A stretch of 64,000 nucleotides of DNA from Octopus bimaculoides. Lineage: Eukaryota. Positions 2,013 through 61,611 of this stretch are shown here, one piece after another. Below the pieces are notes generated by a model. It saw only the letters and a program-made list of their open reading frames with translations, made no database searches and had not been told where the DNA came from. The stretch covers positions 32,574,495-32,638,494 of the forward strand of contig NC_069003.1 of NCBI RefSeq assembly GCF_001194135.2, in the 5' to 3' direction. Position 1 is the stretch's first letter, and the number at the start of each line of letters is the position of its first letter. Position numbers and translations under genes: made by a program.

Positions 2013-61611
<59,599 letters not shown>

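What the first reader, a model, noticed from the sequence alone, without database searches (positions are those of the whole stretch)
28187..28198. 12-nt microexon in the SH3-GuK HOOK linker with a neural-microexon-type 3' splice site
Seen: AG|CCAATGAAGCTG|GTAAGT in otherwise non-repetitive intron, with a long pyrimidine tract and a TGC at 28164-28166. Inclusion changes WDDVIF-FNHSTKF to [17 protein letters not shown]. Established: UGC just upstream of the acceptor is the SRRM3/4 (eMIC-domain) enhancer of neural microexons, and the HOOK region carries alternative inserts in DLG1/SAP97 (I2-I5) and regulates SH3-GuK function. Inference: a possibly unannotated, neuron-specific ZO-1 isoform that standard aligners would miss.
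Basis: partly seen in the sequence, partly recalled or inferred. Interest (0 to 1): 0.72.

Follow-up and report, generated by a model that had tools for sequence, protein, structure and literature searches.

The report
Conserved 12-base microexon in octopus ZO-1
A 12-base mini-exon candidate in a long intron of an octopus ZO-1 scaffold gene recurs, with the same length and reading phase, in the matching intron of a limpet and two other invertebrates, so it is very probably a real ancient exon that lengthens the SH3-GuK hinge by four residues; no transcript data were available, so its use in mRNA and any nerve-specific use are untested.

Summary
AG|CCAATGAAGCTG|GTAAGT lies at 28187-28198, with a TGC at 28164-28166. 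It sits 1.9 kb into the 12.3-kb intron between the ZO-1 exon ending ...WDDVIF (26116-26264) and the exon starting [12 protein letters not shown] (38571-38621). Inclusion changes F to SNEAV.

Within the window alone the site is only suggestive: chance about 1-2.5% for this intron and 5-10% for the whole window.

The decisive evidence is comparative. The orthologous intron carries a 12-nt, phase-1, stop-free unit with AG|C...G|GTAAG in three other species: Lottia gigantea (CTGATGAAGAGG), and two unidentified relatives, L006 (CTGAAAATGGGG) and L008 (CAAACCCTACTG). Under one strict definition these are the only four 12-nt hits in about 284 kb scanned on both strands. The null probability for the three extra species is about 5e-9.

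It is therefore almost certainly a genuine, anciently conserved microexon in the U5/HOOK hinge. Annotated Octopus vulgaris, Littorina and Lottia proteins all show the skipped form, so it is probably alternative.

Inclusion in mRNA, neural specificity, SRRM/eMIC dependence and "unannotated" status could not be tested. The UGC is a weak cue, neither statistically distinctive nor positionally conserved.

The parts
26116..26264 (+). Upstream ZO-1 exon (U5/hook region, ...[21 protein letters not shown]). It ends in phase 1 (T|GTAAGT).
   Evidence: 100% identical over 49 aa to O. vulgaris CAI9739572.1 residues 572-620. About 80% conserved in a related cephalopod contig, L001.
28101..28186 (+). Acceptor region of the microexon: 84-nt AG-free zone, T/C-rich tract (UCUUCUUCAUCUU...), UCUC at -77, acceptor tAG at 28184-28186.
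   Evidence: Pyrimidine fraction is 0.65 over 20 nt and 0.70 over 40 nt, within the range of the gene's 16 mapped acceptors.
28164..28166 (+). UGC triplet 23 nt upstream of the exon start. Candidate SRRM/eMIC enhancer, but low information.
   Evidence: About 30% of decoy sites have a TGC within 40 nt upstream. The position is not conserved across species.
28187..28198 (+). 12-nt microexon CCAATGAAGCTG. T|CC AAT GAA GCT G|TT gives S-N-E-A-V in place of F.
   Evidence: Same-length, same-phase counterparts lie in the orthologous intron of Lottia (L005:3689-3700), L006 (646-657) and L008 (12371-12382).
28199..28204 (+). Consensus donor GTAAGT, with G at exon position -1.
   Evidence: It is stronger than most constitutive donors of the gene. 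G|GTAAG is invariant in all four species.
38571..38621 (+). Downstream exon ([16 protein letters not shown]), which begins the strand leading into the GuK domain.
   Evidence: Aligns to human ZO-1 [12 protein letters not shown].
26265..38570 (+). The 12.3-kb host intron. The microexon lies 1,922 nt from its 5' end.

Best explanation
Window 28187-28198 is a genuine, evolutionarily old 12-nt cassette microexon of the octopus ZO-1 (TJP-like MAGUK) gene.

Splicing (inferred). When it is spliced in between the exon ending WDDVIF and the exon beginning [12 protein letters not shown], the reading frame is kept and F is replaced by S-N-E-A-V. This adds four residues. The exon is far too short for ordinary exon definition. 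Its recognition probably rests on the near-perfect donor (G|GTAAG in all four species) and a pyrimidine-rich, AG-free acceptor region, most likely helped by a tissue-restricted activator.

Protein effect (inferred). The insert lengthens the flexible U5/HOOK hinge just before the strand that joins the SH3 fold to the GuK domain. This could tune SH3-GuK packing or ligand access.

Shown here: the sequence, the frame, the position in the protein, conservation of the unit across species, and that the annotated proteins skip it.

Inferred only: that it is used alternatively rather than constitutively (about 0.8), that inclusion is neural or eMIC-dependent (about 0.5), and any effect on the protein.
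For: 1. The sequence and frame are exact.

2. The splice signals lie within or above the range of the gene's 16 mapped junctions. The donor CTG|GTAAGT is among the best, Y40 is 0.70 and the AG-free zone is 84 nt.

3. The site is not in a repeat.

4. The orthologous intron has a matching unit in three other species:
- Lottia gigantea: T-rich tract, then AG|CTGATGAAGAGG|GTAAGA, 208 nt into an 847-nt intron, reading S-D-E-E-A.
- L006: AG|CTGAAAATGGGG|GTAAGT, 227 nt after the exon.
- L008 (71% aa identity to Lottia): AG|CAAACCCTACTG|GTAAGT, 2.2 kb into a 9.3-kb intron, reading S-N-P-T-A.

5. One strict rule was applied: AG, 12 nt, last base G, GTAAG, at least 65% pyrimidine in 20 nt. With a no-stop condition it hits only these four sites in 240 kb. 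Without that condition the same four are the only 12-nt hits in 284 kb, and all other lengths from 3 to 30 nt together give 7 hits.

6. Order-3 Markov nulls per intron are 0.0067, 0.0006, 0.0010 and 0.0080. The product for the three non-octopus introns is about 5e-9.

7. All four units start with C, so T|Cx encodes Ser. Ser also follows V(I/V)F in the skip forms of Lottia, Littorina, L008 and the intron-less L002 gene.

8. Skip forms keep four residues between VIF and TKF in every species seen, so the unit is an insertion, as expected for a cassette.

9. The architecture fits published descriptions of eMIC/SRRM-dependent microexons: strong donor, Py tract and branch point set back from the AG, long AG-exclusion zone, UGC upstream (bioRxiv 10.1101/2024.09.17.613571; bioRxiv 10.1101/2021.02.24.432780).
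Against: - No transcript evidence of any kind could be obtained.
- All annotated proteins seen (O. vulgaris X4, Littorina X2, the Lottia model) lack the insert.
- The exon sequences share only 3-8 of 12 bases, and the encoded residues are not conserved beyond the Ser and a polar or acidic character.
- The flanking intron is not alignable beyond AG|C and G|GTAAG.
- The strict criteria were fixed after seeing the sites.
- Two of the four species are unidentified.
- A distant relative, L011 (about 37% aa identity), has a complete 5.2-kb intron without such a unit.
- UGC is absent within 100 nt upstream in L008.
Confidence: 0.78

Rival explanations
1. Chance pseudo-exon: an AG and a GTAAGT happen to lie 12 nt apart in a T-rich stretch of a long AT-rich intron, and the spliceosome never uses them.
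For: Within the window alone the site is only moderately unusual. P is about 1-2.5% for the intron and about 5-10% for the window. With loose criteria (any GT donor, Y20 at least 0.6), 12-nt frame-open units occur about once per 1-1.5 kb.
Against: Equivalent high-quality 12-nt units sit in the same intron, strand and phase in three other species. They are the only such 12-nt units in 284 kb scanned, with a joint null of about 5e-9. Perfect GTAAGT is also about three-fold depleted in sense-strand introns here: 6 non-exonic sites against 25 on the antisense strand and about 18 expected per strand. A surviving sense-strand GTAAGT is therefore less likely to be neutral.
Confidence: 0.05
2. Constitutive microexon that gene predictors and aligners miss: the 12 nt are included in essentially all ZO-1 mRNAs, and the annotated skip forms are artefacts.
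For: A 12-nt exon is easily lost by ab initio and alignment-based annotation. The Lottia model dates from a 2012 assembly. Signal strength equals that of constitutive exons.
Against: Three independent annotations, including a RefSeq 'isoform X2' for Littorina and 'isoform X4' for O. vulgaris, give the skip form. The gene's 30-nt exon at 16120-16149 was annotated correctly. The skip form has the same four-residue spacing as the intron-less L002 gene, so it is a legitimate ancestral product.
Confidence: 0.12
3. Conserved splicing aid rather than a coding exon: a decoy or stepwise-splicing unit that helps remove or regulate a long intron and is itself removed.
For: It lies inside long introns in Octopus (12.3 kb) and L008 (9.3 kb). 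The peptide is poorly conserved.
Against: Joining the upstream exon to it gives TTCT|CCAATG, which does not regenerate a GT donor, so classical recursive splicing is excluded. The unit is also kept in Lottia, where the intron is only 847 nt and needs no such aid. The length is exactly 12 in all four species, frame-preserving and stop-free, and always starts with C to give Ser. That pattern fits coding constraint.
Confidence: 0.05

Closest known systems
Neural microexons (3-27 nt) activated by the eMIC domain of SRRM3/SRRM4 or invertebrate Srrm234
   Same: Both are 12 nt and frame-preserving, and both lie in a disordered linker of a scaffold protein. Shared signals are a very strong donor, a pyrimidine tract and AG-free zone set back from the acceptor, and a UGC upstream (-23 in Octopus, -38 and -42 in two others). 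These features are described in bioRxiv 10.1101/2024.09.17.613571 and 10.1101/2021.02.24.432780.
   Different: Neural inclusion and eMIC dependence are unknown here. UGC is not positionally conserved and is absent in one species. No CUAAY branch site is seen in Octopus. The cited work reports that eMIC programs are almost completely rewired between phyla, whereas this unit is kept between a cephalopod and a gastropod.
Alternative HOOK-region inserts of DLG1/SAP97 (I2-I5) and other MAGUKs (from established knowledge, not tested here)
   Same: Both are short alternative peptide inserts between the SH3 and GuK domains of a MAGUK, a hinge that governs SH3-GuK packing and partner binding.
   Different: The MAGUK subfamily is different and no sequence relationship is known. 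The DLG1 inserts are longer (tens of residues) and carry defined binding motifs such as the 4.1-binding I3 insert. This one adds four residues at the extreme C-terminal end of the hinge.
Vertebrate ZO-1 U5 motif and the known ZO-1 splice variants (alpha, beta, gamma)
   Same: It is the same protein family, and the insert falls in the U5 region. Fanning et al. 2007 (cited in PMC3879131) implicated U5 in junction localisation and scaffolding.
   Different: The known vertebrate variants lie C-terminal to GuK, not in U5 (own knowledge). Full-text searches found no paper linking TJP1 or polychaetoid with microexons.
The same gene's small constitutive exon at window 16120-16149 (30 nt, SYIGKKRSS)
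   Same: It is a very short coding exon in a long intron of the same gene with a strong T-run acceptor. This shows the gene's transcripts support very small exons.
   Different: It is 30 nt and is present in the annotated O. vulgaris protein. The 12-nt unit is absent from that protein.

Membership tests
Cassette microexon (3-27 nt coding exon) | Length 3-27 nt, bounded by canonical AG and GT | tested here: met
   12 nt, tAG|...|GTAAGT.
Cassette microexon (3-27 nt coding exon) | Inclusion preserves the reading frame without a stop | tested here: met
   F becomes SNEAV in phase 1. The same holds in the three other species.
Cassette microexon (3-27 nt coding exon) | Conserved at the orthologous position in other species | tested here: met
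   Lottia, L006 and L008 each have one 12-nt unit in the orthologous intron, with null product about 5e-9. Absent in the distant L011.
Cassette microexon (3-27 nt coding exon) | Observed in mature mRNA, with both inclusion and skipping isoforms | not testable with these tools
   No transcript data were reachable. Only skip-form proteins were seen. The junction k-mer had 0 hits in metagenome contigs.
SRRM3/4 (eMIC)-dependent neural microexon | UGC between the polypyrimidine tract or branch point and the acceptor AG | tested here: inconclusive
   Present at -23 in Octopus, -38 in L006 and -42 in Lottia; none within 100 nt in L008. The background rate within 40 nt is about 30%.
SRRM3/4 (eMIC)-dependent neural microexon | Strong 5' splice site, long AG-exclusion zone, Py tract set back from the AG | tested here: met
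   Donor CTG|GTAAGT; AG-free zone 84 nt against a median of about 50 for the gene's exons; proximal Y20 of 0.65 is lower than Y40 of 0.70.
SRRM3/4 (eMIC)-dependent neural microexon | Neural-enriched inclusion that depends on the eMIC domain | not testable with these tools
   No expression or perturbation data.
ZO/TJP subfamily of MAGUKs (host gene) | Three PDZ domains, SH3, GuK and a C-terminal ZU5 domain | tested here: met
   Pfam on O. vulgaris P0002 finds PDZ x3, Guanylate_kin and ZU5. The SH3-GuK region matches human ZO-1 structures at E about 4e-72. The window encodes P0002 residues 124-1240, apart from residues 949-995, which probably fall in an N gap.
MAGUK HOOK/U5 alternative insert | Insert lies between the SH3 core and the GuK domain | tested here: met
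   In the alignment to 3TSW the insert falls just before [10 protein letters not shown].
Recursive splice site / RS-exon | Splicing to the upstream exon regenerates a GT donor at the junction | tested here: not met
   The junction would read TTCT|CCAATG, with no GT.

The most novel reading that the evidence does not exclude
This is an ancient microexon, shared at least by cephalopods and gastropods (a split I take, from memory, to be over 500 million years old). On this reading it is included in neurons under Srrm234-eMIC control and tunes the ZO-1 SH3-U5-GuK hinge. It would then be one of very few microexons shown to be conserved across classes of a lophotrochozoan phylum, and the first regulated insert described in the U5 hinge of a ZO protein.
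Probability: 0.35. Interest if true: 0.68.

Novelty: new member of a known kind. Interest (0 to 1): 0.56.

Why it matters
Microexons are the most conserved class of alternative exons in vertebrates. The papers read here state that the program has been almost entirely rewired between phyla, and my full-text searches found no paper on microexons in octopus or in ZO-1/polychaetoid.

A 12-nt unit kept at one intron of ZO-1 from octopus to limpet gives a concrete, testable entry point into the lophotrochozoan microexon program.

It also marks the last residues of the U5 hinge as a site under long-term regulatory selection. This hinge lies just before the strand that couples the SH3 fold to the GuK domain.

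It is also a practical warning: three independent annotations omit the unit.

Tried and rejected
- **Word-index protein searches with spliced queries spanning the junction.** Searches returned only genomic ORFs from other species. Octopus isoforms were never returned, so absence of an inclusion isoform there means nothing.
- **Spliced query to the representative library.** The single-exon query worked.
- **Exact look-up of a hypothetical O. vulgaris X4 plus SNEAV protein.** Not in the collection. This tests only one isoform combination.
- **Locus look-ups.** O. vulgaris P0002 and Littorina P0017 are not on record. The two intronic ORFs overlapping the microexon are not on record either.
- **Metagenome k-mer scans.** The inclusion junction gave 0 hits. 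The genomic 20-mer gave 2 hits, both in what appear to be bacterial thiolase-like genes reading ...FAANEAGKF..., so they are coincidental.
- **Related cephalopod contig L001.** It holds only 306 nt of the intron and its introns are unalignable with the window. L007 and L009 also stop too early.
- **Repeat or transposon origin.** Rejected.
- **Recursive splicing.** Rejected, because no GT is regenerated at the junction.
- **Conserved flanking intronic motifs.** None beyond the splice sites.
- **Literature.** No paper links TJP1 or polychaetoid to microexons, or octopus to microexons. The run and assembly accessions of L001, L002, L006, L007, L008 and L009 were not found in any paper, so their species stay unknown.

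Full report
**1. The observation**

The window reads ...ttgttgcaattatttctatacttgtAG|CCAATGAAGCTG|GTAAGTgtctg. The 12 nt lie at 28187-28198, GTAAGT at 28199-28204 and a TGC at 28164-28166.

WDDVIF lies in an exon ending ...ATA TTC T|GTAAGT at 26264. NHSTKF lies in an exon starting at 38571, after cttgcAG.

Joining the exons gives WDDVIF-F-NHSTKF. Inserting the 12 nt gives [17 protein letters not shown], in frame. The description is therefore correct in every detail.

**2. The gene**

A recalled human ZO-1 SH3-GuK sequence, used only as a probe, located the SH3, U5 and GuK exons by tblastn.

An exhaustive HMMER search with the U5 exon returned a 1446-aa protein, 100% identical over the exon. Its source names it 'junction ZO-1-like isoform X4 [Octopus vulgaris]', CAI9739572.1.

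- It carries three PDZ domains, a guanylate-kinase domain and a ZU5 domain.
- It maps onto the window as about 19 exons.
- Exon segments match at 93-100% identity, with scattered substitutions. The window probably comes from another Octopus species; this is an inference.
- The spliced SH3-hinge-GuK region matches human ZO-1 crystal structures 3TSW and 3SHW at E about 4e-72.
- In that alignment the insert falls directly before human [12 protein letters not shown], at the C-terminal end of the SH3-GuK hinge (U5/HOOK).

**3. Significance within the window**

The 700 bp around the site (27844-28540) have no other copy in the window. Repeat copies flank them.

Among about 70 AG-N(3-30)-GTAAGT configurations on both strands, this one has the highest upstream pyrimidine content. 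It also has a pyrimidine at -3, a 3n length and an open frame.

Compared with the 16 junctions mapped from the O. vulgaris protein:
- the donor CTG|GTAAGT is among the strongest;
- the acceptor is ordinary (Y20 0.65, Y40 0.70);
- the AG-free zone of 84 nt is long.

Markov simulations of the 12.3-kb intron give 1.1-2.5% for at least one site as good. An empirical estimate for the whole + strand is about 0.05-0.1. Because the thresholds were set after the fact, this is suggestive and no more.

The TGC adds little. About 30% of decoy sites have one within 40 nt, and two constitutive acceptors of the gene have TGC at -5.

**4. Comparative evidence**

The representative search also returned ZO-1 proteins and genomic ORFs from other invertebrates.

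*Lottia gigantea.* The Lottia protein is LOTGIDRAFT_234130, from assembly GCA_000327385.1, which PMC10770140 assigns to Lottia gigantea. It could be traced to its locus. The orthologous intron there is only 847 nt. At 208 nt into it lies tttttttttttttcgttttttttataaAG|CTGATGAAGAGG|GTAAGA. This is again 12 nt and phase 1, and reads S-D-E-E-A.

*L006.* This contig from an unidentified species has ...ggtttttcttAG|CTGAAAATGGGG|GTAAGT, 227 nt after the exon.

*L008.* This contig is most similar to Lottia (71% amino-acid identity over shared exons). It has ...caatacttttAG|CAAACCCTACTG|GTAAGT, 2.2 kb into a 9.3-kb intron, reading S-N-P-T-A.

*Specificity of the pattern.* One strict rule was used: AG, 12 nt, last exon base G, GTAAG, and at least 65% pyrimidine in the 20 nt before the AG.
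- With a no-stop condition in phase 1, it finds exactly these four sites in 240 kb of both strands of the loci held at that point.
- Without the no-stop condition, over 284 kb, the same four remain the only 12-nt hits. All other lengths from 3 to 30 nt together give only seven hits.
- Order-3 Markov nulls give 0.0067, 0.0006, 0.0010 and 0.0080 per intron. With the octopus site taken as the hypothesis, the other three have a joint chance of about 5e-9.

*Limits of the conservation.*
- A distant relative, L011 (about 37% identity), has the intron but no such unit.
- L002 has no intron at this point and reads VVF-SDSV-SKF.
- Three other contigs end too soon to tell.

**5. What is and is not conserved**

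Conserved: the position, the 12-nt length, the phase, AG|C at the start and G|GTAAG at the end.

Not conserved:
- the exon bodies, which share 3-8 of 12 bases;
- the flanking intron, which does not align.

The initial C makes T|Cx a Ser codon in all four species. Ser also follows V(I/V)F in the skip forms of Lottia, Littorina, L008 and L002. The octopus skip form has Phe instead, because its downstream exon begins TT rather than CT. Inclusion in octopus therefore restores the ancestral Ser.

All skip forms have four residues between VIF and TKF, so the unit is an insertion relative to the ancestral protein.

**6. Mechanism**

Shown: a frame-preserving 12-nt unit with consensus splice sites, kept for a very long time, in the ZO-1 hinge.

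Inferred: it is spliced as a cassette exon, so the isoform has a hinge four residues longer just before the strand that couples SH3 and GuK.

The signal layout matches what two papers describe for eMIC/SRRM-dependent microexons. It has a strong donor, a pyrimidine-rich AG-free zone, a UCUC element at -77 and a UGC at -23. This makes a neural, Srrm234-dependent exon the most likely regulatory mode.

These motifs carry little information, however. The UGC position drifts (-23, -38, -42) or is absent. I put neural specificity at about one half.

**7. Rivals**

- *Chance* is excluded by the comparative result.
- *Constitutive inclusion missed by annotation* is possible but unlikely. Three annotations give the skip form, the gene's 30-nt exon was annotated correctly, and the skip form matches the intron-less gene.
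- *A non-coding splicing aid* is unlikely. No donor is regenerated at the junction. The unit persists in an 847-nt intron. It keeps a 3n, stop-free, Ser-initial form.

**8. Known or new**

This is a new member of known kinds: the bilaterian microexon and the MAGUK hinge insert. Full-text searches found nothing linking ZO-1/TJP1 or polychaetoid to microexons, and nothing on octopus microexons.

Whether some RefSeq isoform already contains the insert could not be checked. One hypothetical isoform was not in the protein collection, which proves little.

**9. Verdict**

The core of the interpretation, a real microexon in the ZO-1 hinge, is strongly supported by conservation. Inclusion in mRNA and the neural and 'unannotated' claims remain open and need transcript data.

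Noticed in passing
window 16120-16149 (+): A 30-nt coding exon (G|TCA TAC ATA GGG AAG AAA CGA AGT AGC AG, reading SYIGKKRSS) with a long T-run acceptor. It is present in the O. vulgaris ZO-1-like X4 protein, so very small exons are used elsewhere in this gene.
   Followed up: partly
window about 55992-56163 (+): An open exon-like segment ending ...AGTCG|GTAAGG encodes ...[34 protein letters not shown]. It matches Littorina and Lottia ZO-1 proteins but is absent from O. vulgaris isoform X4. It is probably an alternative cassette exon in the C-terminal half.
   Followed up: partly
L006:1483-1494 and L008:16329-16340: Each of these introns holds a second, weaker 12-nt unit resembling the microexons of other species. 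L006 has CTGATGATGGCA|GTATAC, 8 of 12 bases shared with Lottia. L008 has gAG|CAAATGCTCAGG|GTGAGC, reading SNAQ. They may be a second or duplicated microexon, or chance; loose criteria hit about once per 1-1.5 kb.
   Followed up: partly
window, whole; GTAAGT sites listed: Perfect GTAAGT is strand-asymmetric. There are 11 on the sense strand, of which 5 are annotated donors and 1 is the microexon donor, against 25 on the antisense strand. About 18 per strand are expected from shuffles. This suggests selection against cryptic donors in the gene's introns.
   Followed up: partly
window 23752-24036 (+): A fragment of a mariner/Mos1-type transposase (Pfam HTH_48, E = 2e-12) lies in the intron between the SH3 exon and the U5 exon.
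   Followed up: yes
window 27700-27843, 18158-18302 and 43108-43230: Three copies, about 95% identical, of a short interspersed repeat, with more diverged copies elsewhere. A second repeat family starts at 28541. The microexon sits in the unique stretch between them.
   Followed up: partly
window 50148-51054 and ten shorter N runs (e.g. 15469-15898, 21630-21968): Runs of N embedded in (TA)n/(CA)n microsatellites, either assembly gaps or masking. O. vulgaris residues 949-995 have no match in the window and probably fall in the 907-nt gap at 50148-51054.
   Followed up: no
window 32396-32410 (+): A second, weaker frame-open candidate in the same intron: ccAG|ACAAAATACTGGGAT|GTGAGT, 15 nt. No counterpart was seen in the other species.
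   Followed up: partly
L002:7531-7779: In this compact ZO-1 gene from an unidentified species, about 47% identical to the mollusc proteins, the junction studied here is not interrupted by an intron ([21 protein letters not shown]). The host intron is therefore not universal.
   Followed up: partly
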